The position numbers and the translations under genes are program-made. A DNA stretch of 63,400 nt, counting the filler, from Ministeria vibrans ATCC 50519 (taxonomy: Eukaryota > Protista > Filasterea): assembly GCA_943704425.1 (NCBI GenBank). It is 4 parts of 4 records of this genome, joined end to end, with 100 filler letters (N's around TTAATTAATTAA, not from the genome) between each part and the next. Parts side by side here need not be neighbours in the genome. Positions count along the whole stretch, not along the records: positions 15,013 to 43,348 come from CALSCP010001049.1; 3 more parts are not named here. One strand, 5' to 3'. The notes beneath the pieces were generated by a model. It worked only from the letters and a program-made list of their open reading frames with translations. It was not told the DNA's origin and did no database searches. Of this stretch, positions 5,599 through 42,098 are shown piece after piece; positions within the stretch are counted from its first letter, which is position 1, and the number at the start of each line of letters is the position of its first letter.

Positions 5599-8500
5599 TT
5601 AGACTTCACTCATTCCCTGAGCATTGGTGTAGAACACAGGATTGTCCTCCATGGCACGCGCACCGGCACTGCCATTGTTGTAACCGGCCATAGTCTCGTT
5701 CTGCCAGGCCCCGCCCCACCCGAGCCGCACAGGCGGTGTGCTCAGGGCGGACATGGGCCGTATGGTGCCGCCTGCACCGTTGATGGACGACCCCATGGTG
5801 TCCCACCCGTTAAGGTCGCGTGTCATGCCACCCATGGTGAGCGACGCGTCCGTTGCCGGATCGACACGGTACTTCTTTCGCGTGTACCGCACGTAGTAAA
5901 CGATGCCAACGACAATAATAATGAGCAGCACAATAAAGAAGATGATCAGAGGCCAGATCACGTTGTTTGACGAGGTCTGGCCCGACGAACCGGCCGTCAG
6001 GCTCTGGCAGGTGGGACCCGTAAAGCCAGCAGCACAGGTGCACAGGAAGGACCCTGTGCTCAGACTGGTACACGTGCCGCCATTGCCACAGCTCACCGAC
6101 TGGCAGCGATCTAGGTCTACCTCGCAGTTGATGCCTGTGTACCGTGCAGGACAGGTGCACACATAGCCCGACGACTGAGTGAGGGTGCACGTGGCGCCAT
6201 TGCGACACGGCAAACTCGTACACGCAGTCGATGCAACGGTGCAGTCGGCTCCGCCAAAGCCACTTGCGCATGCACACGTGTAGCCGTTCAGGGCGTCCGT
6301 GCATGTTCCGCCATTGGCACACGGCGACGACGCACATTCGTCAATGGTGCTCTGGCAGCGGGTGCCGGTGAGGCCAACGGGGCAAGTGCAGAAGAAGGAA
6401 CCGGCCGTGTTGGTGCAAGTGCCTCCGTTGACGCAAACGCCCGCTGTGCCACACTCGTCAATGTCCATGGTGCACTGGGGTCCGGTGAAGCCCAACGCGC
6501 AGGTGCACACATATAAATTGGCCAGCGCAGTGCAGGTACCGCCATTGGCACAAGGCGCAGAGGCACACTCGTCGATATCATTCTCGCAGAGGAGACCGTT
6601 GAAGCCGCCTTGGCACACGCAAGTGAATCCGTTGACAGCGTCGACACACGTCGCCCCATTGGTGCATGGCGACGAGGCACACTCAAGCGTGTTCACCGCA
6701 CACGTGTTCCCTTCAAAACCCGCCCCACACGTACATGTGAAAGTGCCGGGCGAAGGAACATTGCACGCGAGAGAATTGGCCGCAACACAGGGACTCGACA
6801 GGCATGGGTTATCGAGAAACTCACAGCGATTACCAACAAACCCTTGCGCACACACACATGCAAATCCATCGACACCATCGACACACGTGCCCATGTTCTC
6901 ACACGGCTGCGACGCACACTCGTCCACATCCACAGCACACGTGGCTCCCGTGTATCCCGCCGCACACGCACATGTGAATGTGCCCGAGCCCGCTTCGGTA
7001 CAGGCGCTTCCCGCCGCGACACACGGCGACGACGCGCACGCCAACACGGTCGACTCACATTGAGTGCCGGTTGCGCCCGCCGCGCACGCACATGTGTAGT
7101 CGCCGAGCACACTTGTACACGAGCTTCCAATACCAACACAGGGTGAACTTGCACACGCGTCCACTTCCGACGAACAAAGTTCCCCTGTGGTGCCCTTGGC
7201 ACACACACAGGCAAAAGAGGCTGTCTGATCGACGCAGGTGGCGCCCGAGGCGCACGGTGACGACGCACACTCGTCCACTGCCTGTGCACAGTTGCTGCCA
7301 GTAAATCCTGCCGCACAAATACAGGTGAAGCCACTCTGTACGTCCACACAGGTCGCGCCCACAGCACACGGATTGGAAGCACACTCGTCGACACATAGCC
7401 TACCCACAACTCCTTGTGCGCAAAGGCACGAGAACGACGCCACACCGTCGACACAAGTGCTCGCATCCGCACAAGGGTTGGACGCGCACTCATCAATGTC
7501 AGTGGAGCATGTCGACCCTGTATACCCTGCGTCGCAGCGACACACAAATCCACCGAGCGTGTCGATGCACTGCGCATGCGCCAGGTCGCATGGGCTGCTC
7601 TCGCACAAGTTGGTTGCTGTCTCGCACTGGTTGCCAAACCATCCGGACGCACAATTGCATCCAAACAGGCCCACATTGTTGACACACGTACCGTTGTTCT
7701 GGCATGGAGACGACTCGCACTCGTCAATGTCCACTGCGCAGGTGACTCCCGTAAAGCCCACTTGACACGCGCACTCAAACGAGCCCACCGCAACACTCAC
7801 ATTGCCGCCGGTCGAGCACACGCCGCCATTGGCACACGGTGATGAGGCACACTCGTCAATGTCCAGGTCGCAGTTGGCGCCGGTGTATCCCACGGCGCAC
7901 GAGCACGCGTACGATCCAGGCACAGGCTGTGCACAGGTGCCGCCATTAGCACAAGGCATGCTCGCACACTCATCGATATCCACATCACAGAGCACACCAG
8001 TGAAACCACTGGCACACACACATGCAAACGCATCCACTGCATCCGAGCACACCGCGCCATTGTGGCATGGCGACGATTCACACTCGTCGACATTGTCCGC
8101 ACACATCACACCGTTGAAGCCAGAGGCACACATGCAGATGAATGCGTTCACTTCGTCCACACAGGTGGCGCCATTCAAGCACGGCACGCTCGCACACTCG
8201 TCCATGTCCACGGCGCAGGTTGTGCCGGTGAAACCTTCAGCGCATGTACAGGCAAACACTCCCGCCTGGACAGTGGAGCACGTTGCACCATTGCCACAGG
8301 GTGACGAGAGACACTCGTTAAGCTCCTGGTCACAGGTTGCACCGGTGAATCCGCCGACGCAGGCACACACAAAGGAATTTGCCTGCGGCTGCGAACAGAC
8401 TGCGCCATTGTGGCATGGACTGCTTGCACACTCGTCGACATCATCGCGACATAACAGACCGGTGTAGCCGGAGTCACAGTTGCATTGGAAGCCACCGTCA

Positions 8501-11500
8501 CCACTGGCTGAGACAGTGCAGGTGCCGTGGGCGCCACAAAGCGGCGTAGACGAAACGAGTGACGAGCACACATCGACAAACTCGGAACGCGTCAGCAGCA
8601 CGTCGGCGAGACGACCCGCAAAGCCAAAGCTGTCGTGAGGACGACGGGCGACAGTGAGCGGCTCGCCTGCCGAGCCCTCGTCCAGTCCAAAGGGCAGCTG
8701 TGCGTCGCCGATGAGAGCACCGTCGTAAAAGACGGTGACACGCTGGAAGGAGTAGCGCACGTGAATAAAGTGCCATCGGCCATCATCGAGTTGAGCATTT
8801 GCTGTCGCATTTACGCTGCTCAGTGCAAAGATGTGACGTGTCACAGTGGTGCCTTGTGGACGCAAGTAGACAAACCACACCGAGTCGGAGGCGGCGTCCA
8901 GGAACACGCCAAAGTACTGACGGAAAGAACCGATGCTGTCGCCCTTGATGAGAAGCCAGCCAATGTTGCTGGTGGACTGCAAAACCCAGCCACTGATAAG
9001 GAAGCCCGCCATGGGTAGCGTGGGCTCTTGTCCGGCGGGCACCGAAAAGATATCTGCGCCGTCCATGCGCACTGCGTTGTCGGTGGTACCGTCGGGGCCC
9101 ACCAGACCAAACTGGGGAGTCGTGCCCAGCGTCTCGTTGACCAGAAGGGGTCGTACACTGTCAATGATGAGTGTCTCGCAGCGTGTGCCGGTGTGTGAGG
9201 TAGGACACAGGCAGGCAAAGGCGTCGGCAAAATCGACGCACGTTGCGCTGTTGGTGCATGGCTGAGAGGCACACTCGTCAACGTTCGTCTCGCACTGTGC
9301 ACCGGTAAAGCCGGCGGGGCACGCACATGCAAACACCCCGATGGTTGGTTCTGTGCACACCCCACTGTTGGCACAGGGCTCGCTGCTACACTCGCCCACA
9401 AGAGACTCGCACTGTGTGCCGGTGTAGCCCGCGACGCAGAGACACTCGTACCCGTTTGCAACGCCCTGCACACAGGTGGCGCCATTGACACAGGGCATTG
9501 ATAAGCACTCGTTGACGTCCACGTCGCACGCGACGCCCATCTTGCCCGCCACACACACGCACACGTACGAATCAATGCCATCCGTGCAGGTGCCGAACAC
9601 CCCGTGGCAAGGTTGCGATGCGCACTCGTCAATATTCGTCTCGCACTGCACACCGGTGTAGCCCAGAGCACAGTTGCACACGTAGCCAGCTAACATGTCG
9701 GTGCATGCACCGTTGGGACCGCACGGTGACGACGTACACTCGTTGATGGCCGTCTCGCACTGCACACCCGTGAAACCTGCGACACACTGACAGGAAAAAG
9801 CATTGAAGTTGTTGGCACACGACGCACTGTTAAGACAGGGCGACGAGGCACACTCGTCAATGTCAAGGTGGCACTGAATGCCCGTGAGACCCGCCGGGCA
9901 GTTGCACACAAACGAGCCCGGCGCCGACTGAGAGCACCCCGCGTTGTTGGCACACGGAGACGACGCACACTCGTCAATGTCCATCTGGCAGTGGACACCA
10001 GTGAATCCCGTGGCGCACGAGCAGGCGTAGCCGTTGACGTGATCAACGCACGTTGCACCGTTGTGGCATGGACTGGAGACACACTCATACACATTACTGG
10101 TGCAAGTGGCACCGGTAAAACCAAGGGAACAGACGCATGTAAAGCCGTTGATGATGTCGACGCAGGTTGCACCATTGTGGCACGGGTTGGAGGCGCACTC
10201 GTTAACATTGGTGGAACACGTCGGACCAGTGTAACCCGATGCACAGGTGCACGCAAAGGCAGCATTCAGATTGACACACGTGGCGCTATTCATGCACGGC
10301 GTCGACGCACACTCGTCAATGTCCATCGAGCAAAAGATGCCGGTGAAACCTGGTGCACACTGGCATGTGTAGCCGTTGGCTGCGTCGTGACAGGTGGCAC
10401 CAGAGGCACATGGGTTTGAGGCGCACTCGTCAATGTTCACTTGGCAATGGGAACCGGTGAAACCCGCAAGGCACGAGCACACATACGAGTCGGGCACCAC
10501 AACGGTGTCCTGCAGCAGCATTGACGGACCAAAGCGGCCAAAAATTGTCTGCGCTGCATCGGTGCAGTTGGGGAACTCCAGAGTGGACGTGTCGGTGCAT
10601 CGCAGGCGTGCAGTGAGCGTCAAATCTGTGGCTGTCTGTCCCGAGGTGGCTGAGGAGACGTACGCATCTAGACTGGACGCCATGTAGTGCGTGAGAATGG
10701 TATATGACTGGCCAGCCGTCAGCACGACAGTGTTGCTCGCGTCAAGGGCCACATAGACAAAGTCGCTAGCGTCGCGCACGGTACCATTGCCTGGAAACAC
10801 TGTGGCACTGGCAAGCAGCAGCTGGTCGCTTTCGCGCCAGATGCCGACTGAGTGTGCCTCGCGCAGACCCATACCACTCGCGTCAAGAACACCCAAGTGA
10901 GACACAAGTGTGTTGCTGTTGACGGTGAAGCGCCAGCCAAGATTCTGCGGGCTGTTGGTGACCGTGTTGATGCCCTCAAGTGAGACAAGGCTGACGGCGG
11001 ATCGATGAGCCAGCTGATTCTCAATGCATGCACCGCCATTCTGACACGGATTCGACTGACACTCGTCAATGTCGGTGGCACAGTGTGCATCGGTATAGCC
11101 AGCGGCGCAGACACACGTAAAGACACCAAGACTGGGAGTGGTGCAAGTGGCGCCATTGCGGCATGGCAACGAGGCACACTCGTCAATGTCCTGCGCGCAG
11201 AGTGCTCCTGTCACACCTGCTGGACACACGCAGTTGAAGCCACCGACGACGTCAACGCAGGTCGATGCACTTGCGCACGGATTGGACGCACACTCGTTCA
11301 CATTGGTTTCGCAGCGAGCGCCAAAGAATCCCGCGACACAGTCGCACGAAAAGGCATCGATGAGGTCGGTGCACGATCCGCCATTGACACACGGCGACGA
11401 GGCACACTCGTTGATTTCCGACTCACACTGGGCACCGGTGTAGCCTGGGGAACAGGTGCACGAGGCGCTGGTGAGCGAATAAAGCACGGTCAAGGTTGCG

Positions 11501-15621: not shown

Positions 15622-15784
15622 AGATTGGTGTATTTATAATAGTAAAAAATAATAAAATAATTATACCATAAAGAGAAGTGATAGAGAACAAAAGAATTAA
15701 TAAAGACGTATCACAATAAAAATAATAATTTTATTAATGAAAAAAAATTAAAAAAAAAAGTGATTCGAAAAATAACAAAAAAAA

Positions 15785-15929
15785 TGCCCAGGACCGGGTT
15801 CGAACCGGTGACCTTCGGATAACCCAACAACTTTCGCAAGCTGCTGATTTGTACATTGTGTTTTATGAGACCAACGAGGCACGGACTTTATAAAAATGAG
15901 TCCTTCATGACCAACTAGACCACCCAGGC
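15785..15929 (-). tRNA. Elongator tRNA-Met(CAU) with two introns: 28 nt at 24/25 (15877-15904) and 43 nt at 37/38 (15821-15863)
   Basis: Removing both inserts gives a 74-nt cloverleaf: acceptor GCCTGGG/CCTGGGC-A, D arm GTCT-AGTTGGTCA-TGAC, anticodon arm TTGGT-CTCATAA-TCCGA, T arm ACCGG-TTCGAAC-CCGGT. An oligo-T Pol III terminator follows directly. Confidence 0.9.
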
Positions 15930-16472
15930 TTGAACTAAATCAGCCAAAAAGTGCTATTTAAACATGTTTTGATCTTGCCACCCGCTTTTGCCCTTGTAAT
16001 GTCCACAGTATCAATCAACCTTTCAATTGGCTTAGACGAGAAGAAGGCTCTTACATTTACGTATTTATTTCAAAAATAAAAAAATCAATTTGGTGTTTTT
16101 GAGATATGTGTGGTCTGTCGTGAATGCAGAGGGATTGCAGACAAAAGAGAACACTAAGTGACACCGTGAGTCCGTGACACCGTGACAGTATGGCTGCATG
16201 ACTCTGGTCTAAATTTCATGAGAAAAAATATAGAAGAAGACGAAGAAGAAATAATCACTCAGTAACTCTCAAAATACGTTGATACAAAAAAAGTACAATG
16301 TCCGCCATAAACCAACTCCAAAAGATAGAGCGTTGACTCAGCGTTCATAGAAACATAGATTAAAAGTAAAAATACGATCTCACATCGAGCGAACAGGAAA
16401 TCGGGATGTACACTGATACTACTATTGAGAATATAAAAGAAGAATACACGCCTTATTCATTATTATTCATTT

Positions 16473-19400
16473 TTAATCCATGTCGTCGAGTAAATCATCG
16501 CCTCCAGCAGCGTCTTCGGCTGTCGATGCTAACTGGCCATGGGCCATCTCGCCGGTGGCCACAAAGGCAAGCGCAGTGTCTCGACTGACTGTCGAGTCTT
16601 CCGATTCATCCGTGCTAATCAGTGTAATCCCGTCGCCCACAACCATCTTCCAAAAGTCCTCTCGGTCCTTGAACTCATAGTCGGCCTTGAGCGTCTCCAG
16701 GAAGATGTTGAAAAGCGCACTCATTTCCACCGAAATGCACCCCTTGCGCATCGCACGCACACATTCCAGCGCCTTGTTGTACGCCTGTGCCTGTCCATAC
16801 GAATCCTCCACGATGCCCCGGAGCACTCGCCCGATCCCTACACACAAAGCCGCATCAAAAATAATAAGAGCAAATTCCCCTCCTCGATTGCGACTCGTCT
16901 TCAACTTTGCATCATTCAATACCTTCAATGGCTTTGTGGTGCAAATCCCCGTCCGAGTTCATCATGGCATTGAAATCCTGAATGGGAGTGTTGGCACCGA
17001 CGTCGGTGACCATGGCACCATCGCCACCGCCCATGCTTGCAAGCGCCAGACCGGCACTGCCCGACACACTCGCTCCCATCTTGCTTGCTTCGTCGTTGGC
17101 CAACATGGTTGTGTTCCACGCCGCGCCGCTCGACACGGCACCTGCACTTCCCGTTGCGCCCGCTGCAGCACGCTTCACGCCTTGCTCATTTACTTCGAGT
17201 GGAAATTCATCGCGCACACGCTTCAGCGACTCGCGAGCGCGTTCTTGTATCTCAGGGTTGCGTTCCAGCATCGCTTTGAGCGGTTCAGCCAGGGGTGCCA
17301 GTGGCTGTGCATGACCCCGCACAAAAAAAAATGTTTAAAAATGAACAGAGAGAGAGAGAGAGAGAGAGAGAAAGGAGGGAGATAGAAACAAAGTGATAGA
17401 GAGAGAGAGGAAGGAGGGAGATAGAAACAAAGTGATAAAGAGAGAGAGAGAGAGGAGGGAGATAGAAACAAAGTGATAAAGAGAGAGAGAGAGAGAGAAA
17501 AAAAAGTCATACCTGGTCAGGTTGAAAGACGCGGTGCTCTACGACCTTAAAAAGATGCTGCAGGCCTGGATTGGGAATGTGCTTGGGCTGCACGCCTTCG
17601 CCCCTCTCCCCTCGTCCCAGGTCCACGTCATCTAACTTCATTGATTCCACCAACGACTTGACAGCGTTGCGCTAAACAACAACGTTGTAATAATGAAAAA
17701 CAATTATTATTATTATTATAAAAAGATAAGACAAGTCGCAAATGAGAAAGGTCCTTTGGGTTCCATTTGCGTACTTGAGAGGTAGAAATGTTGCTGCGAT
17801 CATGCGTGAAATCGGGAAAGGAGTAGAAGCGAATGTCGTCGGCAAAGGGAACCTTCACCATCAGCAGCGAGTGGTAGTGTTCTTTGATGTGCGGAATGAG
17901 TATTACGAGTCGAGCGTCGAGTCCTGAGCAACCAAACGTGATTGTGATGTTGTGATTTAAACTCTTTTTTGTTTTGTTCTCATTGTTTTCAGTCATACCT
18001 TGGCGATAGACAAACCGAGCCAGAGCAACCTTCTTATCACGCTTGAGGGCACGCACAAAGGCATCAAAGGCACGCACAGCGTTGGGGTCGTTGCGCGGCA
18101 CCACAGCAGCCACACTGCTCATAAAGTGGAAGCGGGGAATGTCGTTGCGCGGCGTGAACTGCAACACGGAGAGACCGCTCGAGGTGGGGAAACTGTCGGC
18201 GTTCTTCTCGAGGGGCACATAAACCTTGCCAAAGCGATAGCCTTCGATCACCTCCTGCTCCTGCATGTCCTCGTCGTCGTCTCCGTCCGCCTGCCCCTCG
18301 CTCTCCTTGCTCATGGTCGTCTCGCGAATGGCCCGTACTTGGTCGTGCTGATTACCTCTCCCTGCATTGGCGTCGTCCTCGGAGAGCACAGAGTACTACA
18401 CCAGAACAAGAACAAGGTCGAATACGAACGGTTGAAGAAAAACAATAAAGTGTTAAGTGGTACCTTGAAGAAGGAGGGGTATTTTTGGGAGTTGGTGCGC
18501 ATGTAGGCCTCGACGGGGATTTTGACCTTGCCAGCAATGTCGAGGGCGCCGCGGTAATAAACTGTCTGACGTGTGCGCTTCTCGACAAACACCATGGCCT
18601 CAAGCGCATCGTCAATGGCAAACACACTGCCGTCCGCGACGGTGTCGGCCATTTCGTGCAGCGACTTCATCGCCTCCGTTTGCGGTGTTTCGGATGAAAC
18701 AGCTTCCGCGCTCTGCACCCCTGACAGCGACAGGCAGTCAATGACTTGCAAGATAAACCCGTGAGCCTTAAGTCCTTCGCAGATCGATTCAAACGAGCCT
18801 CGGTCATTAAGAATAGGCGAGCGACCGTCTACAACAAAAGCAAAAAGTGAGTGATACAACAACATGTAGAGGCAAGGGTGTATGTGTGTCTTAGTTGTGT
18901 GTCTTTTTGTGTCTTTGTTGTGTCTTTGTTGTGTCTTTGTTGTGTGTCTTTTTGTGTAGCTTTTTGTGTCTCTTTTTGTGTCTTTGTTGTGTCTTTGCTG
19001 TGTGTCTTTGTGTGTGTTTTTGTGGTGTTTGTGCTGTTTTTGGTGTGTGTGTCTTTGTGGTGTGTGTCGCTGTTGCGTATATGGAATGATGGACCTGTGA
19101 TCACAACAATGCGCTTGTCTTGCTTCTTCTTGGCGACCGATCGCACAAGCGAGTCCATTGCGACCACAACCGCATCAATGACTACGGAGACATGCCACGA
19201 AGAGAATAAAGAGAAGAATGTTATAAAAGGACGCGACAATGCGGACGCGGGCGTGCGGTTGGTGCTGCGTACTGTCGCCACTGTCGTTGAGGTTGAGTTT
19301 CAGCTCGTTTCGCAGGAACAACATCACCTCAAAGTCGGGCGGCGTGAGGTCGCGCGCCAACGAGATGTGTGCATACCGCTCGCTGCCCTCCTCGTACACG

Positions 19401-30279: not shown

Positions 30280-33200
30280 TTACACTCTCACCACTCCGTT
30301 TCCCTCTTTGAAAAGCTGAATGTCGCCTTCGTTGGTCGCCTGTCCGCTCCAAGCTGTCCAAATGCGCCCTACCACCGTCGCCTGATATGTATTTGCCCGG
30401 TCTAATAACTGCAACTGGCGGCGCAGTTCGACGGCAGTGAGCACATCCGACTCCTTAAATGCTGCTCGCTCTCTGCCCAGCGCCCGGATCAGCATTGACG
30501 TAAACTGGGTTGTCGATTCATCGCGTGTCAAATACGACGGTGTACCGCGCAGTGAGCTCGCAATCATTTGTCGTGCGTAGTTTCTCACAGGTGCAGCTCT
30601 GTCCTCGGGCACAATCAGAGTCTCCTGGACACCTCCATCTTGCATCACTATGTCTCCCTCTCCTCCAGGCACCAGTGCTCCGCTGTTGCAAAAGTCGCCC
30701 AGGACAAGGACGTTACAGCCAGTCCATCCTATCTCATCAAGAAGAATTGACGCCAGCCAGCGCAAAGTGAGAGGCAAGACACGTCCTGTCGGCGAGAGGC
30801 GGGCATCACTCAAGAGCAGTCCACCATCACCATCCATCGGTCCGTGGCCAATCAAATGCACGATCAGCAGCGAGTCCCTCCCAGCAGTCCTTCCTGCCTC
30901 CTGCGCCAGCACGCGGCCCTCCTTGATGATCTGCGCCCGTGTCACGCGATCGCCCTCCTCTCGGTCCACCACACACCTCACCCCAAATCCCCGCTCCACC
31001 CACAGTTCTTGCAGCTGGCGCACACTCTCTCGGACCCCAACAAGGTCGTCGTAGTTCTGTAAGATTTTATTCTTCGTTGAGCTGTACCGGCTGACACCAA
31101 TGATTAGCGCCGAGGCGTGCGAGTAGATGCCTTGCGCTGCAAAGAGGGGTAAGAATGACTCGAACATGCATGCATGTTTGTTACGTACGCTGTTGCTTGA
31201 CCCACCAGGACTCGAGATTCACATTGTACTGCACCTTTTGACCTGAGTGGCGTGCCAATTCGCTCCTCACTGTTGCAGCGTGGCGGCAGTACTCAAGCTG
31301 CTTAGCAACCAGATCGGGATCAAAGAGAGGGCATTGAGTGCCGTTTGATGCAGGGAATGGATGTACAGGTACGACGACTGCTCGTCCGCGCCAGCCCCAT
31401 TTCAAAGTGCGTGTCTGGTGGCACACACTCTCGCATAGCTTCGTCCAAGTCGCCTCCACCTCCTTAGCTGGCGCACCAGCGGTCAGTTCGACTCTCACAA
31501 ACGACTCATTGCTGTTGAGTCGCAATCTCAGAGGCACACACCCGTCCATTGTCAGCGCATTGGTACACCGTTGCGTCGCCTCGATCACACTCCCAGCAAT
31601 GCTTGCGCGCCACAGCGACACCATCACTAGATGGAAGGTCGCCAGAGACACAGGCAGTATCGTCCAATCATTCTTGTCGGTTTCGATCATCTGATAGAGA
31701 AACAGCTCGGCGGGCGCGGGCGCGGCGAGCGGAACAAAAGGAGCGTCGTCGGGGAGCAGCATGGGCAGCAACAGCAAGTCACCGTGACGCATCGCCAGGC
31801 TCAGGTGCTCCAGGCACTCGATGAACGTGTCAACATTACTCACGTTACCGCCACAGAGTAGAGGGTCCGCGCTGTCTTTGGCCGCCGTCCACACGAGCCA
31901 CTCAGCCACTTCGCGTGGGAATCCTTCTGAGGACCGGATGAACGATTCGTCAAGAGTTTTCAGCACTCTCTCTGCACGAGACCGATCAAGGAGACGACCC
32001 GCCTCAATGACCTTCCTGAGCATCCCCTGTGCTCTTTCGCTTGAAGCCCGTCCCCATCGCGCCATCACCACAGAGCAGAGCAGTTCCAGCGCCGCAATCA
32101 AACGCGGAATGTCAAACACGACTGTGTCCGTCTCGCGCACATTTTGAGACGTCGCGTCCTCTCGACACACCACGATGTCCGCGGCTGACTCCAGATAGGG
32201 CACTAGTCCAGTGCGGACCATTGCATCGTCAGAAATCAACGCAGAGAGAGTGATGGGTGGGTCGTTGTTGAGGACAAGCAAGCCGAGATCTGCCACACGT
32301 GACATAAGTGTGATATTCTTCTCTCGAGCCCATCGCCCAATCAGATCCTGCGTGCACACGTACTCCATCGGAAGAGTACGCAGGCGCACGGCATCATGCA
32401 GTGCCTTTGAGAGCGCCTCCAGTCCAATCCTTTTCTCGCTGCCGACCGCAAAAAATGAAAGTGGAGGATCGTGTGGACAAATCAGATGATCGCCCAAGAG
32501 CTCAGCGACAAGACTGAAGATCGCGTCTGAAACTGACTGGAGAAGAGTGAGTGGAGCTGTGTCGTCGGGAAAGGTGTCAAGGTGAGTGCCGACGATGATG
32601 ACTTTGAAGTAGGAATGAATGGTGGTGGGCACTTGGTGCATGACCATGTGAGCCCACTTGGAAATGTGTTCATACTGGCGCTGGGCAGTCGTTGTGACGG
32701 ACATGGCGGAGAGGTCAAAAACGATGAGGTAGAGGGACTCGGAGCCCATAAACAGAGATGGGAGGGAGTCAAACTTGGGCTCGCCTAAGAGGGCGAGAAA
32801 GTAAACGTGGCGAAAAAGAACAAGGGTGAAGAAGCGAGTTCCAAAAAAGGAAAGAGCGAAAAAGAGAAGGGGATTGTGGAATTGTGTACCGGCAAAGTCT
32901 AAGGTCTCAAGGTCAATGTGGCCCTTGCGCAAGTCCGACTGGAGCAGAGCGTGGACGGCTTGCATAGTAGCGCTGATGATGGGGCGTGGTGCCGCATTGC
33001 TGGAGAAGACTAGCTTCAGTTTTTCCATAAAAGAGGGGGCTGGGACTCGTATGTGCGGAGAGGCGGGTGTTGTAGGCCGAGTTGATGGTGGTACACGAAA
33101 CAAGGATGCTGATCTGGTAGGTGTCGCTGCTGGTGAAGCGTCACGCACACTTAATGTTGTCGGAAGAGAATCAACGTCCTCTACTTCACCAGCAATTACG

Positions 33201-35111
33201 GCATCGCTCTCCTCCCGTACTGAGATGAGACTTGCCAAGTGAAACTCATCCTCAGGGACTGCTCTGAAAAGACCCGTACGGCCGTCAAAAATCATTCGCA
33301 GTCGCTTCATGCGGGTCGCCACTGAGCGGTCCCTTGGGTCGGGCAGCGGGTTCCCCTGCAAAGCTGCAACCAGAGCCGTTTTGCCGGCGAAGACAGCACC
33401 CAAACAGAGCAATTTGATTGAGCGGGAGTGCACAGAGCCACGCTGGAGGGCAGCGTTGAAAGCTTGATCGTATCGACCTATGATGGAAGATTTGGTCAAA
33501 ACGCTTGGCGACTGATACACACGATAAGACCTTTCACAACAAATAACTCCTTTAAGAATGCTGTTGTGTCTTGCTTCCACTGCGCTCGGTCTGCAATGAC
33601 AAAGTAACAACTAAAATAATGGTTCTAACAAAAACGACTCACCAACTAGAAAGACGGTTACTTACTCATTCTCACTATTCTCAAACCTTACCAACTAAGA
33701 CAATGCAAAGAAGAACACACCAGTCCAAAACACATGTCCAAATCAGTCACTCACTCATTCTCACTATTCTCAAATCTTACTCCCTAAGACAATGCAAAGA
33801 AGAACACACCAGTCCAAAACACATGTCCAAATCAGTCACTCACTCATTCTCACTATTCTCAAATCTTACTCCCTAAGACAATGCAAAGAAGAACACACCA
33901 GTCCAAAACACATGTCCAAATCAGTCACTCACTCATTCTCACTATTCTCAAATCTTACCGTCTAAAACAATGCAAAGAAGAACGCACCAGTCCAAAACAC
34001 ATGTCCAAATCAGTCACTCACTCATTCTCACTATTCTCAAATCTTACTCCCTAAGACAATGCAAAGAAGAACACACCAGTCCAAAACACATGTCCAAATC
34101 AGTCACTCACTCATTCTCACTATTCTCAAATCTTACCAACTAAGACAATGCAAAGAAGAACGCACCAGTCCAAAACACATGTCCAAATCAGTCACTCACT
34201 CATTCTCACTATTCTCAAATCTTACAGTCTAAGACAATGCAAAGAAGAACACACCAGTCCAAAACACATGTCCAAATCAGTCACTCACTCATTCTCACTA
34301 TTCTCAAATCTTACTCCCTAAGACAATGCAAAGAAGAACACACCAGTCCAAAACACATGTCCAAATCAGTCACTCACTCATTCTCACTATTCTCAAATCT
34401 TACCCCCTAAGACCATGACCAACAGCAGAGAATCAAGACAAAAAATTGTGTCAGGTATACACTCAAACAGCGGATATTTCAGAATAGAAACCGTACAGTC
34501 TACAGAGACGTCAGCGTTAGCGAGCCTGTCAAACGAACATATGCTCTCTTACAAACTGCAAAACACAAAGTGCCACCAATCGAGGAGCAAGTTAGAACCG
34601 ATCAGTATCCATTGTCAAGCAAGTCACAAACCTTCTAAAAGAGACAATAATAATAATAATAATAATAATTATTATTATAGTTATTGTTTTAGTTTGCGTC
34701 GACCAAATCCGACTTTTTGGTCTCACTTGCACAGAGATTGTCCAGCCATGGCGTGAACCCTTCGTTGCCTTTGTACGTAATCTCCTGCAGGTGTCCTCGC
34801 ATGTCTACAATGGCTGTTGGGAGCGTCTTGAGCTGGCACTTCCCGACGTCAAGCAACTTCGTCCAGAAACAACAGTCGACCGTGAGAAATCGTCTCCGTC
34901 CTCCCTCGTCCCATACCTTGAGCTTCTTGAACCGGCTAATCCAGTCGGGAATCACCTCAAGCGGGTTGCCTGTCAGCAGCAGTTCCTGTAGAGTGTCAGC
35001 AAGAACAAGAATTTCTTCTGGTAGAGAAGTGAGCCCCATCCCCCTCAGGTTCAAGGAATGGGACGCGCGAGCCTCGTCAATGCGTTCTTGTAGCGAGAAC
35101 AATAGGGACAT
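30280..35111 (-). CDS. Roco protein: LRR, micro-exon-encoded loop, Roc GTPase, COR, caspase-like (peptidase C14) domain
   Basis: LRR LNLRGMGLTSLPEEI...LLLTGNPLEVIPDWI; Roc G1 GAVFAGKT, G3 DFAG, G4 VGTHLD; caspase ALIIGVSRY, HLIGHG, LGDFCNSG. A 52-nt GT-AG intron (31137-31188) joins the COR and caspase ORFs in frame. Confidence 0.85.
33692..34406 (-). repeat. 89-bp tandem array: 8 near-identical 86-nt introns (gtaagatttgag...cattgtcttag) separating 9 variable 3-nt micro-exons
   Basis: Exact 89-bp period. Triplets at 34404, 34315, 34226, 34137, 34048, 33959, 33870, 33781 and 33692 read GGG, GGA, ACT, TTG, GGA, ACG, GGA, GGA, TTG on the minus strand, each as tag|NNN|gtaag. Confidence 0.92.
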
Positions 35112-35567: not shown

Positions 35568-36565
35568 ATGGATGAAATCAAGCTTTCTGTTGGCTCATCC
35601 AGCGTCACTGTCCGACTTCACGGCGCCACCGTTGTGTCGTGGGTATGTGACGGCGTTGAAAGACTCTTTGTCAGGTGCGCCACCATGTTGTGTAAACAAA
35701 GGCCCTCTCACACACGGACCTCTCCAGCTCACGGTCGGTCAATGACGGCGTCAAAGCCATTCGAGGCGGCATTCCCGTGGTGTTTCCGCAGTTTGGGCCT
35801 TGGGCGCTGGGCCCAAACCATGGGTTTGCGCGCATTTCGCGATGGCGCAGCGACTCAGTGACTGACACGAAAGCGGTGCTGGTCCTCGAAGACAGCGCCA
35901 CGACGCGCGCCATGTGGCCCCATCGGTTTAGACTAGAGTATACCGTTGAGCTGTGTGCGACGTCCTTCGAGCAGCGTCTCGCCGTGCACAATGTTGGCGA
36001 CGACCCCTTCTCCTTCACGACCCTCCTCCACACGTACTTCCGATGCGACGCGGTTGCCGACTGTTCCGTGTCAGGCTTCAAAGACTGTGTCTTTGTTGAC
36101 AAAACACAGGACATGAAGGAGTCAACAGAGTCCAGGTAGGCAAGGAAGCGTTGCCTTCCCTTCCTCACTGTCATTCTTCCTCTGTTTTATAGGGATACCA
36201 TTGATGTCAAGTCGTATACCGACCGCATCTATCGCAGCACTCCGAATACTCACGTGCTCAGCGGATTAGCAGGAAAGACAACGATTACATTGGAAAAGCA
36301 AAATTTTGCTGACACGGGTACACACACACACAAACTCAAAACAATGAAAATCTTTTCATCTTTTCATCTTTTCACACGCTCTCTCTTTTATTTTGGGACA
36401 GTTGTGTGGAACCCGTACGAGGCAGTAGCTGCGACCATGGGCGACTTAGGGGCCGACCAGTGCCCCTACTTTGTGTGCGTCGAGGCCGGTACCGTTGCGG
36501 ATCCCATCACCCTCACAGCCGGCCAATCATTTTGTGCGACTCAGAAATTTATTGCGCATTTGTGA
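35568..36565 (+). CDS. Glucose-6-phosphate 1-epimerase (aldose 1-epimerase family)
   Basis: HGATVVSW, KAIRGGIPVVFPQFG, HGFAR, LLHTYF, VVWNP, FVCVEAG. Confidence 0.93.
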
Positions 36566-37045
36566 AATGAAAACACCAGAGAGACGGAGAGACAAAACCC
36601 CATTTGGCAAACGACGATCCATTCACTCTTCAATCGAAACCAGTGTTGAATACTGTATGAAAAAAAGATTGAATTAAGAAAAAATAAATAAGAAGAGCTG
36701 TCAAAACAAGACAATATACAAAATAAAGAGCAGCACAATACTTCCGCCGTAGACTTCAAGACGAAAATGCCCCGAAAGAAGCCCATAGACTCACTGATAC
36801 ACCCACCCATGAAAAGAATGTACGGAGGCACAAATGATTGAAATAGTTAGTGTGAACTCACTATACATAGAGTCTCAGACCAAACTCACCAAACAAAAAA
36901 CTTAAACACTTTACACTTAATATTTTTCAGCTGTTTCATCCAGCCTCGGTATCCCCCTCTGGCCGCGTGGACCGAGCGAACGCCGAGAACGTAGCTCTGA
37001 AGTGAACGCGCGAGGTCTTCGTCAGAACGCATTGGATCCGGTGCA

Positions 37046-37623
37046 ATGTCTCTCCCCGGCATTGACACAGTCTGTCACCCAGTCGGCGCGGCGTACGGCG
37101 TCATTGCCGACCACACCGTGCGAACACAGCGCGCCATCAAGACCTTTGTCAAGGACCATGAAGTACGCAGAACGAATTGAGTCTCTCATTCTCACCTGTG
37201 GGGTTTTCGCTGTCAGCGTCGCGATGAAATTGAGCAGCAGCTCAACCGAAGCGTCGAGGCCGTGTCGATTCTCAACGAGGCAAGGAGGCTACACGCGAGC
37301 GCACGCTGACTGACACGGCTCCCTTTGTTTTGCAGCGCACCATTCCGACGACGCAGGAGCATCTGTCCAAACACCTACCGCGCGCCAGCCAGCTGCTGCA
37401 GGAGTCCTCGCAGCTGCTCCAGAGCATCCTTGAGCGCGAAGGGACACACCGACAGCGCCGAAGCGAGCGTGCAGCACAGCGACAAGCCCGTCTTGCGCCC
37501 GAGAGGGAGGCGCTCGAAGCGCAGTGGAAGCTCGAGCGGGAGCGCGTCGACGAGGCCTTCGCACGCGACGCCGCAGCGATGAAGGCCGACTACGAGGCAA
37601 TGGGAGTTGTGTTTGAGTCGTGA
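37046..37623 (+). CDS. BLOC1S5: BLOC-1 subunit 5 (Muted)-like, 3 exons, second intron GC-AG
   Basis: Spliced product IADHTVRTQRAIKTFVKDHE...LNERTIPTTQEHL...RERVDEAFARDAAAMKADY parallels Muted (LLDHRPVIQGETRYFVKEFE...TNEHTLP...RAEVDEEH), compared from memory. Confidence 0.7.
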
Positions 37624-37938: not shown

Positions 37939-40900
37939 ATGACCAAAACACGATTCTCTTTGTTGGACGTCAACGCTGCACTGCCGCACATTCGCAAGTA
38001 GGAGACAAAAGAAGAAGACTCGACCGACGCTGAACATCCTCTCTGCACGCCACCCACGCACTGCAGGCACCTCGGCCTTCGCGTTGTCAATGTGTATGAC
38101 GTCGACAGCAAAACGTACCTCATCAAGCTGGCGCAAGCGGGCGTCAAGGCTGTGCTCTTGGTCGAAAGTGGCATCCGCATCCACACGACCACCTTTGAAT
38201 GGCCAAAGTCCCAAATGCCCAGCTCCTTCTCCATGAAGGTGCGCCATTCTCACATCTCGGTTGACCCTGCTTGGTCTCTTGAGAGCAAGCCTGTGCATAC
38301 GGCACACGAGCGAGTTTTTTCGTCATTGCATAACGTTTCCATTATATTTGTCTCTTCCGACTGTGTGTGTAGCTTCGCAAGCACCTCCGCACGCGGCGTC
38401 TGCATGCCGTGCGACAAATCAACAACGATCGGATCATCGATCTCGAGTTTGGCTCGGGCGAGGCTGCGTATCATGTGATTATCGAGCTATACGACAAGGT
38501 ACCCGAAGTGGCTCGTCGCAATATGCGCCCTTACGATGTACTATTCACTTCAGGGCAACATTGTGCTCACCGACTGGGAGTACACGATTTTGAACATTCT
38601 TCGGTCGCGCACCACCGACCAGGATGTGCGGTTCTCCGTGCGCGAGAAGTATCCCTTGTTGTTAGACGGAGACAGTGGTCGTGCGCGCCAAGACGTGACG
38701 CTTGAAACCCTCACTGCAACCCTGCAAGAAGACACCCTGAAAGGTGCCTTGGAACAACACTTTTTTTCTCTTCTCTTTCATTGTTTATGCCTGACTCGCT
38801 TCTTTATTGATGTATTTCCAAGGCGAGCTGGTGAAAAAGGTCCTTGCGAGTCGTTATTCATTCAGCGGTGCGCTCGCCGAACACACAGTGCTGCGAGCGG
38901 GACTGCGCGCCGGGGCCAAGGTGGACGCGGTAACGGGGGACGCGAACGGACTTGAGCGCCTGCTGGGTTCACTGCAAGAGGCGCAGGCAATGCTGACGGC
39001 CATGGCAGTGACGCCCGCCAAAGGGTACATTATTCAGCGCAAGCAGATGCGCGCAACCGGCCAGCAGCCCAAGAAGAAGAAGGACGAGCAAGGTGCAGCG
39101 GCGTCGAGTAGCGAAGACGCAACAGCTGCCGCAGCAGCCACTGAAGGTGACTTTTTGCTGCTTTCAGACAGCTTTGAGCCGTGTTTGTATGCGCAAGACG
39201 CGGACAAACCGCACGTTGAGTTTGAGACGTTTGACTTGGCCGTCGACGACTTTTTCTCCAAGATGGAAGGCCAAAAGCTTGACGTCAAGCAGGCGAGCCA
39301 GGTAAAAGGGATTCTTTTTACTTGCTATGGTGCAAGGAGTACTTAAATACGTTGGTGTTTGGGTAGGAACGGTCGGCGCTGAAGAAGTTGGATAAGGTGA
39401 AGAAGGACCACGCGCGACGACTGGAAGCACTGCGCACGAACCAGTTGGAGAACGAGCGAATGGGCCAGCTCATTGAGTTTAATGTGGAACTCGTAAGGAA
39501 ATGCATCAGAAGAAGAGGAAGAGCGTGAATTAGTGACACAGAAAGAAAGAAAGAAAGGGAGAGAAAGAAAGAGAGAAAGAAAGAAAGAAATATTTGAGGG
39601 TGTGTGTAAAAGATGAGAGTAAATCATTGACTTGCTTTTGTTTAATAGGTCGATCAGGCGATTTTGGTGATTCGGAGTGCGATTGCGAATCAAATGCAGT
39701 GGGATGCGATTGACGCCATGATTGAAGAGGCCAAAGCGAACCAGGATCCTGTGGCGACGTACATTGACGATGTCTCATATCCGACCAACTCCATGACATT
39801 GATGCTCAGGTAAGGGAGAGAAACAAAGTCAAACAAAGTGAAGCAGACGAGAGAGCAACAAAGAGAAAGAAAAAGAAAGAAAAAGAGAGAGAGAGAGAAA
39901 GTGAAAAGTGATAGAGCAACAAAGGGATAAAGAGAGGGAGGGAGAAAAAACAAAAGAAACGAAGTGATAGAAAAAGAACAAGAGAAACAAATTGATAGAG
40001 GCGACTCTGGATTGGTGTGAATTTGTTTCGCAAATTGTAACATATGAGATGTTTTTCCCTTCTCTCAGGGATCCTTATGAGGTGACGGAAGAGGACTTTG
40101 AAGAGGACCAGGCGCGGGAAGGAGGCGGCGAGAGTGGCTTTTACCGTGTGCCTGTTGACCTGGGGCTCTCGGCGTATGCCAACGCGACGACGCTGTACGA
40201 AAAGCGACGGGGGGCGGCGCGCAAGGAGCAGCGCACGCTGGATGCCAGTGAAATCGCGCTCAAATCGGCAGAGAAGCGTACGAAAAAGGCACTGAAGCAG
40301 GTCAACACAAAGATGGTGGTGCGTAAGTTGCGCAAAACATACTGGTTCGAGAAGTTTGTGTGGTTCATCTCGTCCGAGGGCTATCTGGTGGTGTCGGGGC
40401 GCGACATGGGCCAGAACGAGTTGCTGGTGAAGCGCTACCTGCGCAAGGACGACCTGTATGTGCACGCAGATGTGCACGGCGCGTCGAGCTGTGTGATCAA
40501 GAACCCTGGGGGCGGCGACGTCCCACCGCGCACCATTGGCGAGGCCGGTAATCTGGCCGTGTGCTTCAGCAGTGCCTGGGACGCCAAGGTGCTCTCGGGC
40601 GCTTGGTGGGTGCACGCTGACCAAGTAAGCAAGACTGCACCGTCGGGCGAGTACCTCACCACTGGTAGCTTCATGGTGCGCGGCCGCAAGAATATGATTG
40701 CTGCTCAGCCGCTCGTGCTCGGCTATGGATTTCTCTTCAAGATGGACGAAGACACGGCGGCACGTCACGCAGCGGCACAGCGCAGCATCAAGGACGAAGA
40801 CGACGAATCGACCAAGGGCAAGGGCAAGGGCCAGGAAGAAGAAGAGCTAGAAGAAGAAGAGCAGGAGCAAGAAGAAGAGGCAGAAGAAGAAGAAGAAGAT

Positions 40901-42098
40901 GCGGACATGGAATTTCCAGACACGGAGATTGGTACAGAACATTTGGCAACACCCACGCCAGGTGTTGATGTGCGCACGTCTGCTCCCGAATGGCCAGTGC
41001 CCAAAACTACCGAGACAGCCGCCGCCACGACGACAGCGAAGACCGCACAAGGCGAGGACGGTGGGAGCGACGAAGAAGACGACGACGAAGAAGGAGGAGG
41101 AGAGGATGCGATTGAAGACGGCAGCAGCAAGGAAGGCGCCGGAAGTGGTGGTTCTAAGGGACCATACCTGACGGCAAAGCAGCGACGCGACATGAAGAAG
41201 AAGAAGCAGGAAGGCGTTGCGGAGTCAGCGCCGACTGCTGGCGAGTCGAAGAGCAGGAAGAAGAAGCTGCCCGAGGAGTTGACGGAAGAGCAAAAACGAC
41301 AGCAGCAGGCGGCAATGGTGCCTCGCAAAGCCAAGAGCAAGAAGGCCAAGGCGAAGCAGAAGAAAATGGAGGAGCGGTACGACGAGGAGGAACTGGCGCT
41401 GATGCGCAAGATGCTTGGTCAACGCGCACCGCGCACGGCTGCTCCCGTCGACGAAGAGGCGGCAGCACGGGCAGCGGCTCTGGACGAGGCAGTCACAGCG
41501 ATCAGTGAGGCCGCCAAGGGCCCTAAGGGCAACAAGGGCAAGGGCAAGGCCAAGTATATTCAGCCGCGCGCTCCGCCAACGTATGGCTAACAAAAAAAAA
41601 GAGCGAGAATTTCACACTTGACACACACACACACACACACATGAATTTTTTTTTTTTTGTATCTGCACCCGTAGTGACTCTGATGCGGTTGTGGTGACAC
41701 CTTTGGAAGTGTTGACGGACGAGCAAAAGGCACAAGAGGAGCGAGAGCGAGAAGAGGTTCGAGCGCTGCGACAGGAGGAAAACATGGCCGAAGACGAAGA
41801 GGAGACGGCCACGTCGACGCTCGAGACGCTGACGGGTACGCCCGAGGCAGGCGACATGCTGCTCTACGCCGTGCCCATGTGTGCACCGCTCTCGGCCATG
41901 ATCAACTTCAAGTACCGTGTCAAGCTCATGCCGGGTCCGTCCAAGCGCGGCCAGGCAGTGCGTGCCATCATGCAGCAAATGAACCGCACGCCGGGCGCCG
42001 TGCCCCACGAGCTTGATCTCTTGCGTGCCTGTAAAGACACCGAATTGTTGCTTGCCGCTCGAGGCGACGTCAAGGTGATGCCAAGGAGCTCCAAATGA
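37939..42098 (+). CDS. NEMF: Ribosome quality control factor NEMF/Rqc2
   Basis: [83 protein letters not shown]...KYRVKLMPG. Confidence 0.95.

What the first reader, a model, noticed from the sequence alone, without database searches (positions are those of the whole stretch)
15785..15929. tRNA-Met with two introns, one at a non-canonical D-stem site with a BHB-like motif
Seen: besides a canonical 37/38 intron (43 nt, C32 able to pair with the antepenultimate G, internal GCGA-capped hairpin), a 28-nt insert AGGACTCATTTTTATAAAGTCCGTGCCT interrupts the D stem between 24 and 25. It folds as helix GGACT/AGTCC, bulge GA^A, central helix TCAT/GTGC (3 of 4 pairs) and bulge CT^C. Cutting after the second base of each 3-nt bulge, as tRNA splicing endonucleases do, restores the cloverleaf exactly. 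Known: multiple and non-canonical BHB introns occur in archaea and in some red and green algae and nucleomorphs. Inference: this lineage has a relaxed-specificity TSEN and may hide more disrupted or permuted tRNAs that standard scans miss.
Basis: partly seen in the sequence, partly recalled or inferred. Interest (0 to 1): 0.8.

Follow-up and report, generated by a model that had tools for sequence, protein, structure and literature searches.

The report
Two-intron tRNA-Met among scrambled tRNA genes
The window holds a real methionine tRNA gene interrupted twice, once inside the D stem, and it is one of at least 18 ectopically split or circularly permuted tRNA genes in what looks like a non-photosynthetic protist, a gene style so far reported only from a few algae and from archaea.

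Summary
On the minus strand, 15929-15785 encodes an elongator tRNA-Met(CAT). It is interrupted by a 28-nt insert between positions 24 and 25 and by a 43-nt intron at 37/38. Removing both gives a 74-nt cloverleaf. The D-stem insert has a relaxed bulge-helix-bulge (HBh') geometry, which occurs at about 0.0012 per position by chance.

ARAGORN in default mode and Rfam both miss the gene. It has a conserved upstream promoter (AAAATA-N7-ATAGCAC-T-run, one mismatch here) and a T8 terminator.

Using that promoter as a probe, I found many more such genes in the same 29.7-Mb genome:
- The same 28-nt D-stem intron design in tRNA-His and tRNA-Pro(CGG).
- D-loop introns in Gln, Pro(AGG) and two Leu genes.
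- Ten circularly permuted genes for Lys, Thr, two Arg, Ala, Ser, Ile and Gly. Three of these also carry T-loop introns.

Sen2, Sen34, Sen54 and RtcB are present. LHC and PsbO were not found, and the proteins I searched resemble slow-evolving animal proteins most.

This is the Cyanidioschyzon-type disrupted-tRNA system in a new and apparently heterotrophic lineage. No RNA data exist, and the organism is not placed.

The parts
15944..15970 (-). Upstream Pol III promoter: distal box AAAACA (consensus AAAATA), 7-nt spacer ending in a TATA-like TAA, core ATAGCAC, then TTTTTGG. It ends 14 nt before tRNA position 1.
   Evidence: Pattern searches of the whole genome: 14 hits versus 1 in the control for the 17-mer, and 19 exact hits for AAAATA-N7-ATAGCAC. 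The motif sits upstream of intact, intron-containing and permuted tRNA genes and of 5S rRNA. This copy has 1 mismatch.
15905..15929 (-). Exon 1: tRNA positions 1-24 (acceptor 5' strand, D stem 5' strand, D loop, first three bases of the D stem 3' strand).
15877..15904 (-). Intron 1: 28 nt at non-canonical position 24/25 in the D stem. Layout: one bulge base, a 5-bp hairpin with an 11-nt loop, a 4-nt strand pairing with exon bases 20-22, then two bulge bases.
   Evidence: BHB scoring: H 3/4, h' 5 bp, h 0. It is the best of the 4 admissible boundaries. The hairpin is present in the MFE and centroid folds. The null rate is 0.0012.
15864..15876 (-). Exon 2: positions 25-37 (C25, G26, anticodon stem 5' strand, C32 U33 C34 A35 U36 A37).
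15821..15863 (-). Intron 2: 43 nt at the canonical 37/38 position. Its last six bases give a 4-bp helix with positions 32-35 plus a UU|A bulge. It also holds an internal 9-bp hairpin with a GCGA loop.
   Evidence: H 4/4. The hairpin is in the MFE fold. ARAGORN reports an intron at (39,43) once intron 1 is removed.
15785..15820 (-). Exon 3: positions 38-73 (anticodon stem 3' strand, variable loop AGGUC, T arm with loop UUCGAAC, acceptor 3' strand, discriminator A).
   Evidence: The partial RF00005 alignment covers this part.
15777..15784 (-). Run of 8 T directly after the discriminator base: a Pol III terminator.
   Evidence: Sequence. The same arrangement follows all the other native tRNA genes examined.

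Best explanation
This is a functional nuclear gene for elongator tRNA-Met(CAU), made from three exons.

Proposed pathway:
1. RNA polymerase III starts from an upstream TATA-like promoter shared by the genome's tRNA and 5S genes, and stops at the T8 run.
2. The roughly 145-nt precursor carries two intervening sequences.
3. The tRNA splicing endonuclease (Sen2 and Sen34 catalytic subunits, with Sen54) cuts after the second base of each 3-nt bulge of two bulge-helix-bulge-like motifs. One is a relaxed HBh' motif built by the 28-nt insert in the D stem (24/25). The other is the usual anticodon-loop motif (37/38).
4. An RtcB-type ligase joins the exons.
5. RNase P, tRNase Z and CCA addition finish the 74-nt tRNA.

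Shown here: the gene anatomy, the motif geometry, the promoter and terminator, the presence of the enzymes, and many sister genes with the same design. Inferred: that the cuts happen at these bonds, their order (by analogy with C. merolae tRNA-Phe, the stable D-stem motif first), and independence from TFIIIC.
For: - Removing the two inserts restores a 74-nt cloverleaf.
- Only 4 boundary choices pass a strict filter, and the proposed one has the best BHB score. The chance rate is 0.0012.
- The same 28-nt architecture (1 bulge base, hairpin, 4-nt H strand, 2 bulge bases) recurs without sequence similarity in tRNA-His(GTG) at 23/24 (H 4/4, h' 7 bp) and tRNA-Pro(CGG) at 25/26 (H 3/4, h' 8 bp).
- Ten permuted genes reassemble into 72-82 nt cloverleaves, with BHB-like leader/trailer pairing at the junction.
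- A shared upstream promoter and a downstream T run are present.
- BLAST of the precursor finds no second copy.
- Sen2, Sen34, Sen54 and RtcB are encoded.
- In paralogue pairs all differences fall in introns, leaders or linkers and none in exons. The single change in the His intron keeps its pair.
- There is an experimentally verified precedent for D-stem plus 37/38 introns in C. merolae tRNA-Phe(GAA) (PMC3728597).
Against: - No RNA evidence of any kind.
- The central helix has only 3 of 4 pairs, and the 3' bulge has no closing outer helix.
- A register shifted by one base (26-nt intron) gives 4/4 central pairs, but it leaves a 76-nt tRNA with a 2-nt bulge in the D stem.
- The whole precursor does not fold better than shuffles (z = -0.61).
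- With two free deletions, thousands of spurious cloverleaf parses exist, so cloverleaf restoration alone proves little.
- An uninterrupted tRNA-Met(CAT) of a different, odd class lies on the 3.4-kb contig C2062:713-783, so this gene may not be the only source of elongator tRNA-Met.
- The tRNA census is incomplete: only 63 of 508 candidates were scored.
Confidence: 0.85

Rival explanations
1. It is a decaying tRNA pseudogene. A former tRNA-Met gene with a canonical intron took a 28-nt insertion in the D stem and is no longer used.
For: An uninterrupted odd-class tRNA-Met(CAT) exists elsewhere. The BHB is imperfect. There is no expression evidence.
Against: - All stems of the spliced product are intact, and the promoter and T8 terminator are preserved.
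- The insert has the exact length and layout of the introns in tRNA-His and tRNA-Pro(CGG).
- No uninterrupted nuclear copy of tRNA-His, tRNA-Gln or tRNA-Ile(AAU) was seen among the genes examined. So the interrupted design is the working design in this genome.
Confidence: 0.05
2. The gene is functional, but the D-stem insert is handled differently from what is proposed. Possibilities are other cleavage bonds (for example the 26-nt register), another nuclease, or retention as an enlarged D arm.
For: The register shifted by one base gives a 4/4 central helix. The 3' splice site is not held in a closed bulge. tRNA-Ala(AGC) genes here carry 9 extra D-loop bases without a convincing BHB, so oversized D loops may be tolerated.
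Against: Only the 28-nt excision gives a standard D stem with G10-C25 and a 9-nt D loop. The 28-nt length and layout recur in three genes. Retaining the insert would break the D stem.
Confidence: 0.08
3. It is a chance resemblance: a tRNA-like 3' half next to unrelated sequence.
For: Rfam scores the raw locus at only 14.9 bits. The unconstrained deletion search yields many parses.
Against: The acceptor stem pairs 7/7 between the two ends 130 nt apart. The anticodon arm, T arm, promoter and terminator are all in register. The joint probability is far below the number of places tested.
Confidence: 0.01

Closest known systems
[quoted passage not shown] 2007, 2013; PMC3728597, PMC3978253)
   Same: - Genes with a D-stem intron plus a 37/38 intron (C. 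merolae tRNA-Phe GAA).
- T-loop and D-loop introns.
- Circularly permuted genes with junctions in the anticodon, D and T loops, some also carrying introns.
- Strict and relaxed BHB types (hBHBh', HBh', hBH).
- An upstream TATA-like element and a downstream T stretch at permuted and ordinary genes alike.
- No TFIIIC box-binding subunit identified.
- A Sen54 homologue present.
   Different: - The host here is a 29.7-Mb genome with no detectable LHC or PsbO, and its proteins look most like animal ones.
- The promoter is a sharply defined bipartite motif of about 20 nt that also precedes 5S rRNA.
- Several ectopic introns have the same length (28 nt).
- Nothing has been verified at the RNA level.
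Archaeal non-canonical BHB introns and permuted or split tRNAs (Thermoproteales, Thermofilum pendens, Nanoarchaeum)
   Same: Introns at many cloverleaf positions, up to three per gene. Recognition is by a BHB motif independent of the mature domain. An upstream AT-rich promoter is used.
   Different: The archaeal enzymes are EndA homo- or hetero-oligomers. Here the eukaryotic Sen2/Sen34/Sen54 set is present. The genes are nuclear, with Pol III T-run terminators.
Permuted tRNA genes of prasinophyte green algae and the Bigelowiella nucleomorph, and ectopic introns of the Guillardia nucleomorph and Chondrus crispus (Maruyama 2010; PMC13578239)
   Same: Eukaryotic nuclear or nucleomorph tRNA genes with permuted order or atypical intron sites.
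   Different: All of those lineages are photosynthetic or derived from algal endosymbionts. This genome shows no sign of photosynthesis.
Ordinary eukaryotic tRNA introns at 37/38, cut by TSEN with a ruler mechanism and the anticodon-intron pair
   Same: Intron 2 of this gene fits: position 37/38, C32 paired to the antepenultimate intron base, and 3-nt bulges.
   Different: Intron 1 lies in the D stem. That is where Sen54 is thought to contact the mature domain, so the ruler mode cannot apply to it.

Membership tests
Endonuclease-spliced (BHB-type) tRNA intron at a non-canonical position | Excision restores a standard cloverleaf with all conserved elements | tested here: met
   A 74-nt tRNA-Met(CAT) by ARAGORN and by my own strict parser. 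The joined sequence was tested only inside scripts.
Endonuclease-spliced (BHB-type) tRNA intron at a non-canonical position | Two 3-nt bulges on opposite strands separated by a 4-bp helix, each flanked by a helix (hBHBh'), or an accepted relaxed form (HBh', hBH) | tested here: met
   Met only in the relaxed HBh' form: H 3/4, h' 5 bp, bulges GA|A and CU|C, no outer helix. The strict form is not met.
Endonuclease-spliced (BHB-type) tRNA intron at a non-canonical position | Splicing endonuclease and ligase encoded by the genome | tested here: met
   PF01974 twice (Sen2-like at C1078, Sen34-like at C1244). The Sen2 region is 45-49% identical to animal Sen2. Sen54 domain PF12928 scores 38.9 bits. 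RtcB is present.
Endonuclease-spliced (BHB-type) tRNA intron at a non-canonical position | Spliced mature RNA and excised intron observed | not testable with these tools
   No RNA data are available.
C. merolae-type disrupted nuclear tRNA gene system | Ectopic and multiple introns in several tRNA genes | tested here: met
   Met, His x2, Pro(CGG), Pro(AGG), Gln, Leu(CAA) and Leu(TAA), plus T-loop introns in Thr, Arg(TCT) and Ala(TGC). Boundaries for Leu(CAA), Leu(TAA) and Pro(AGG) remain uncertain.
C. merolae-type disrupted nuclear tRNA gene system | Circularly permuted genes (3' half, linker, 5' half) whose ends can form a BHB | tested here: met
   Ten genes for 8 isoacceptors reassemble into 72-82 nt cloverleaves. 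For Lys(CTT) the junction at 59/60 has H 3/4, h' 9 bp and h 6 bp.
C. merolae-type disrupted nuclear tRNA gene system | Upstream TATA-like promoter and downstream T stretch at disrupted and intact genes | tested here: met
C. merolae-type disrupted nuclear tRNA gene system | No TFIIIC A/B-box binding subunits | tested here: inconclusive
   PF04182 gave no match. The domain is poorly conserved, the search works exon by exon, and Tau95 was not searched.
C. merolae-type disrupted nuclear tRNA gene system | Circular RNA intermediates of permuted precursors | not testable with these tools
   This needs RT-PCR or RNA sequencing.
Eukaryotic elongator tRNA-Met | Anticodon CAU, G1-C72, U54, and none of the initiator marks (A1-U72, three G-C pairs at the bottom of the anticodon stem, A54/A60) | tested here: met
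   Spliced sequence. A separate gene with the initiator marks is at C1760:25620-25691.

The most novel reading that the evidence does not exclude
This would be the first eukaryote outside the photosynthetic lineages (red and green algae and their nucleomorph descendants) with a Cyanidioschyzon-style tRNA gene repertoire. Nearly half of the native tRNA genes found are ectopically interrupted or circularly permuted. All are driven by one sharply defined upstream promoter shared with 5S rRNA, perhaps without TFIIIC. If the host is an amorphean or holozoan-like heterotroph, as its protein affinities hint, the trait is either much older in eukaryotes than thought or has arisen repeatedly wherever an external Pol III promoter frees tRNA genes from the internal A and B boxes.
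Probability: 0.55. Interest if true: 0.88.

Novelty: new member of a known kind. Interest (0 to 1): 0.8.

Why it matters
Reviews up to 2026 treat permuted and multi-intron nuclear tRNA genes as a peculiarity of a few algae and of archaea. They discuss whether the trait is an archaeal relic or an algal invention.

A second, independent and apparently heterotrophic lineage with the full syndrome makes that question testable. The syndrome comprises D-stem, D-loop and T-loop introns, permuted genes, an upstream promoter and T-run terminators.

The finding links the syndrome to an external Pol III promoter, which removes the need for intact A and B boxes. It also offers a TSEN that has a Sen54 homologue yet must cut motifs in the D arm.

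In practice, standard tRNA finders would report this genome as lacking tRNA-His, Gln, Ile, elongator Met and others.

Tried and rejected
- ARAGORN with introns allowed miscalls the locus as tRNA-Lys(UUU) with a 63-nt intron. I rejected this because that fold ignores the CAU arm.
- An unconstrained search over two deletions gave 21,095 'cloverleaves' for this locus. Cloverleaf restoration by itself is therefore not evidence, and I replaced it with a strict filter plus BHB scoring and a null.
- The whole-precursor fold energy is not informative.
- Two exact-pattern scans of the metagenome contigs with exon 1 and with the T arm plus acceptor found no relatives, so no cross-species covariation test was possible.
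- Attempts to name the organism all failed:
  - NEMF, HSP70 and Sen2 searches gave only 44-73% hits, mostly animals.
  - Exact look-ups led only to unnamed ENA metagenome contigs (SCHR19-1 series) and to a sequence filed under Alexandrium margalefii MMETSP0661, 636/637 identical. I take that for a contaminant of that transcriptome.
  - Literature searches on accession numbers and assembly statistics found nothing.
  - Mitochondrial proteins could not be used because UGA codes for Trp and the pieces are too short for the word search.
- Boundaries of the inserts in Leu(CAA), Leu(TAA), Pro(AGG) and Ala(AGC) could not be fixed with a good BHB.
- The spliced tRNA sequences were built and tested only inside scripts. 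The joined sequences were not sent to Rfam or any database tool. Those tools saw the raw loci by reference only.

Full report
**The locus.** The gene lies on the minus strand from 15929 to 15785. ARAGORN in default mode and Rfam at gathering scores find nothing in the whole piece. A permissive Rfam scan of the locus gives RF00005 only 14.9 bits, against a threshold of 29, and only over the 3' part.

Inside a script I removed precursor bases 26-53 (window 15904-15877) and 67-109 (15863-15821). The remaining 74 nt are called tRNA-Met(CAT) by ARAGORN, with seven acceptor pairs, D stem GTCT/TGAC, a 9-nt D loop with GG, anticodon loop CUCAUAA and T loop UUCGAAC. Removing the first insert alone yields tRNA-Met with a canonical 43-nt intron. 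The product has G1-C72 and U54 and lacks the initiator marks. A separate initiator gene exists at C1760.

The joined sequences were made and tested only in scripts. They were not sent to any database or covariance-model tool, which saw the raw loci by reference.

**Is the D-stem insert more than chance?** I coded the bulge-helix-bulge rule: cleavage after the second base of each 3-nt bulge, a 4-bp central helix H made by the four exon bases before the 5' bulge and the four intron bases before the 3' bulge, an inner helix h' and an outer helix h.
- For the 28-nt insert, H has 3 of 4 pairs (one U.C), h' has 5 pairs, and h is absent. This is the relaxed HBh' class of the literature (PMC3728597).
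- A free search over two deletions gave 21,095 cloverleaf parses, so restoring a cloverleaf is weak evidence on its own.
- With a strict filter (anticodon CAT, U33, purine 37, GG in the D loop, 4-5 nt variable loop) only four boundary pairs survive.
- Over every position of this 28-kb piece on both strands, H of at least 3 with h' of at least 5 at length 28 occurs at 0.0012.
- A register one base further (26-nt intron) gives H 4/4 but leaves two extra bases that bulge the D stem. It stays as a minor rival.
- The canonical intron has H 4/4, including C32 with the antepenultimate G, and an internal 9-bp hairpin with a GCGA loop.

**Context of the gene.** Eight T follow the discriminator base directly. 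Upstream lies the motif TAAATAGCACTTTTTGG, ending 14 nt before position 1.
- The same 17-mer occurs 14 times in the genome, against once for the reversed control.
- The extended form AAAATA-N7-ATAGCAC has 19 exact copies.
- It precedes intact tRNA genes (Trp, Ser, Gly), genes with canonical introns (Leu, Ser, Tyr) and a 5S rRNA gene confirmed by Rfam at 81 bits.
- Other native genes carry the variant TATATCAC plus a T run.

This is a general upstream Pol III promoter, of the kind described as a loose 'TATA-like sequence' in C. merolae (PMC3978253).

**The rest of the genome.** The assembly has 29.7 Mb in 2860 contigs and is eukaryotic. The window carries NEMF, Ku and metacaspase genes. Following the promoter and the weak Rfam hits, I found the following.

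*Introns in the 3' strand of the D stem.* They have the same 28-nt layout as in tRNA-Met but no sequence similarity to it:
- tRNA-His(GTG), two tandem copies, position 23/24, H 4/4, h' 7 bp.
- tRNA-Pro(CGG), position 25/26, H 3/4, h' 8 bp.
- Both also carry canonical introns.

*D-loop inserts*:
- tRNA-Gln(TTG), 44 nt, H 3/4, h' 5 bp.
- Pro(AGG), Leu(CAA) and Leu(TAA). For these three the exact boundaries are not settled.

*Ten circularly permuted genes* (3' half, short linker, 5' half, T run) reassemble into 72-82 nt cloverleaves:
- Lys(CTT), two copies, junction at 59/60, with H 3/4, h' 9 bp and h 6 bp.
- Arg(TCG), junction in the D loop, plus a canonical intron.
- Thr(CGT), Arg(TCT) and Ala(TGC), junction at 37/38, plus a 28-32 nt T-loop intron.
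- Gly(TCC), Ser(TGA) and Ile(AAT, two copies), junction at 37/38.

Rfam at E of 0.01 sees none of the permuted genes or the His gene I scanned, apart from a partial hit on Lys.

Of about 40 native-type tRNA genes catalogued, 18 are ectopically interrupted or permuted. The census is incomplete, because the genome-wide RF00005 search scored only 63 of 508 candidates. Within paralogue pairs, every difference lies in an intron, leader or linker and none in an exon.

**Enzymes.** Two PF01974 catalytic homologues are present. The Sen2-like one has the N-terminal and catalytic domains and is 45-49% identical to hemichordate, mollusc and shark Sen2. A Sen54-type domain is found at 38.9 bits, and so is an RtcB ligase gene. 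The TFIIIC B-block domain gave no match. That parallels C. merolae but is inconclusive.

**What organism?**
- No LHC and no PsbO were found, and no plastid-type rRNA showed up in the SSU search.
- The mitochondrial contig C1523 is AT-rich, uses UGA for Trp and is gene-rich.
- NEMF, HSP70 and Sen2 find animals first, at 44-73% identity.
- The only near-identical sequences are in unnamed marine-looking ENA metagenome contigs and in the Alexandrium margalefii MMETSP0661 transcriptome (636/637). I read the latter as contamination of that data set.

I conclude that the host is a non-photosynthetic protist, perhaps amorphean. This is not established.

**Comparison with what is known.** The anatomy matches the C. 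merolae system point for point, including a verified two-intron gene with a D-stem and a 37/38 intron. It also matches archaeal multi-intron tRNAs in logic. Reviews up to 2026 list only red and green algae and nucleomorphs among eukaryotes. I therefore file it as a new member of a known kind. Its interest lies in the host lineage and in the sharply defined promoter.

**Verdict.** I put the probability that the gene is functional and spliced as described at about 0.85. The missing pieces are RNA evidence and the placement of the organism.

Noticed in passing
L001-L003, L005 (G000:C2093:~9000-9400, C585:~35700-37100, C2083:~6900-8100 and ~38150-38540): A second class of tRNA genes is packed in clusters with 25-60 nt spacers. 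They have very high Rfam scores but odd features: G34 anticodons in four-codon boxes, 74-nt 'Leu' tRNAs without a long variable arm, some with encoded CCA, and no upstream promoter motif. They may belong to mobile or viral DNA.
   Followed up: partly
L118 (G000:C2083:28300-38100): A low-GC island (37.6% against about 50%) holds tightly packed same-strand ORFs. These include a 1376-aa SF1 helicase fused to a GIY-YIG nuclease and an rve integrase, directly upstream of one odd tRNA cluster. It looks like an integrated virus-like or Polinton-like element.
   Followed up: partly
L054 (G000:C2062:713-783, minus) and L052 (C425:28813-28986): An uninterrupted tRNA-Met(CAT) of the odd class, with a C4.A69 mismatch, sits on a 3.4-kb contig. 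A neighbouring pair Phe(GAA, with encoded CCA) and Ile(GAT) sits on a 107-kb contig. All are followed by T runs but lack the native promoter.
   Followed up: partly
L069 (G000:C2371:~117400-117582, minus) and L097 (C1674:~162100-162391, minus): L069 has an exact copy of the Pol III promoter motif followed by about 130 nt of structured-looking sequence and a T run. It matches no Rfam family and no tRNA parse, and could be an unknown small RNA or a more deeply scrambled tRNA. L097 has only a one-mismatch motif and no T run, so it may be a chance hit.
   Followed up: partly
L095 (G000:C1646:1-186, minus): A 5S rRNA gene (Rfam 81 bits) is preceded by the same upstream motif as the tRNA genes, so one external promoter type seems to serve all Pol III genes seen.
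   Followed up: yes
L074 (C1993), L070 (C2431), L071 (C2497): Runs of 5-7 T lie inside a T-loop intron, a permuted-gene linker and a D-loop insert. Real terminators here have 7-11 T. How Pol III reads through the internal runs is unexplained.
   Followed up: no
L049-L051, L061, L063 (C123, C434 x2): Three identical tRNA-Ala(AGC) genes have a 17-nt D loop (9 extra bases) with no convincing BHB. This is either a very short intron or a tolerated oversized loop.
   Followed up: partly
G000:C1523 (at least 56 kb; L004, L006, L010, L022, L023, L026, L030, L038): A mitochondrial contig at 22-28% GC, with UGA read as Trp, tRNA-Trp(UCA), about 30 tRNA hits and ribosomal protein genes (rps12, rps4-like) next to cob, cox1-3 and nad genes.
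   Followed up: partly
L032 (G000:C2175:25904-27817) versus P0242: An intronless HSP70 ending in EEMD is 636/637 identical to a protein filed under Alexandrium margalefii (MMETSP0661) in EukProt. This suggests that the transcriptome contains this organism as a contaminant or associate.
   Followed up: partly
window 31181-33610 (minus), 30280-31167 (minus), 17628-18389 (minus), 39992-41590 (plus): Neighbouring genes in the window: an 809-aa ORF with no Pfam hit that the protein atlas places next to Roc-COR GTPase families, a metacaspase-like ORF, a Ku70/80 exon and an NEMF (Rqc2) exon.
   Followed up: partly
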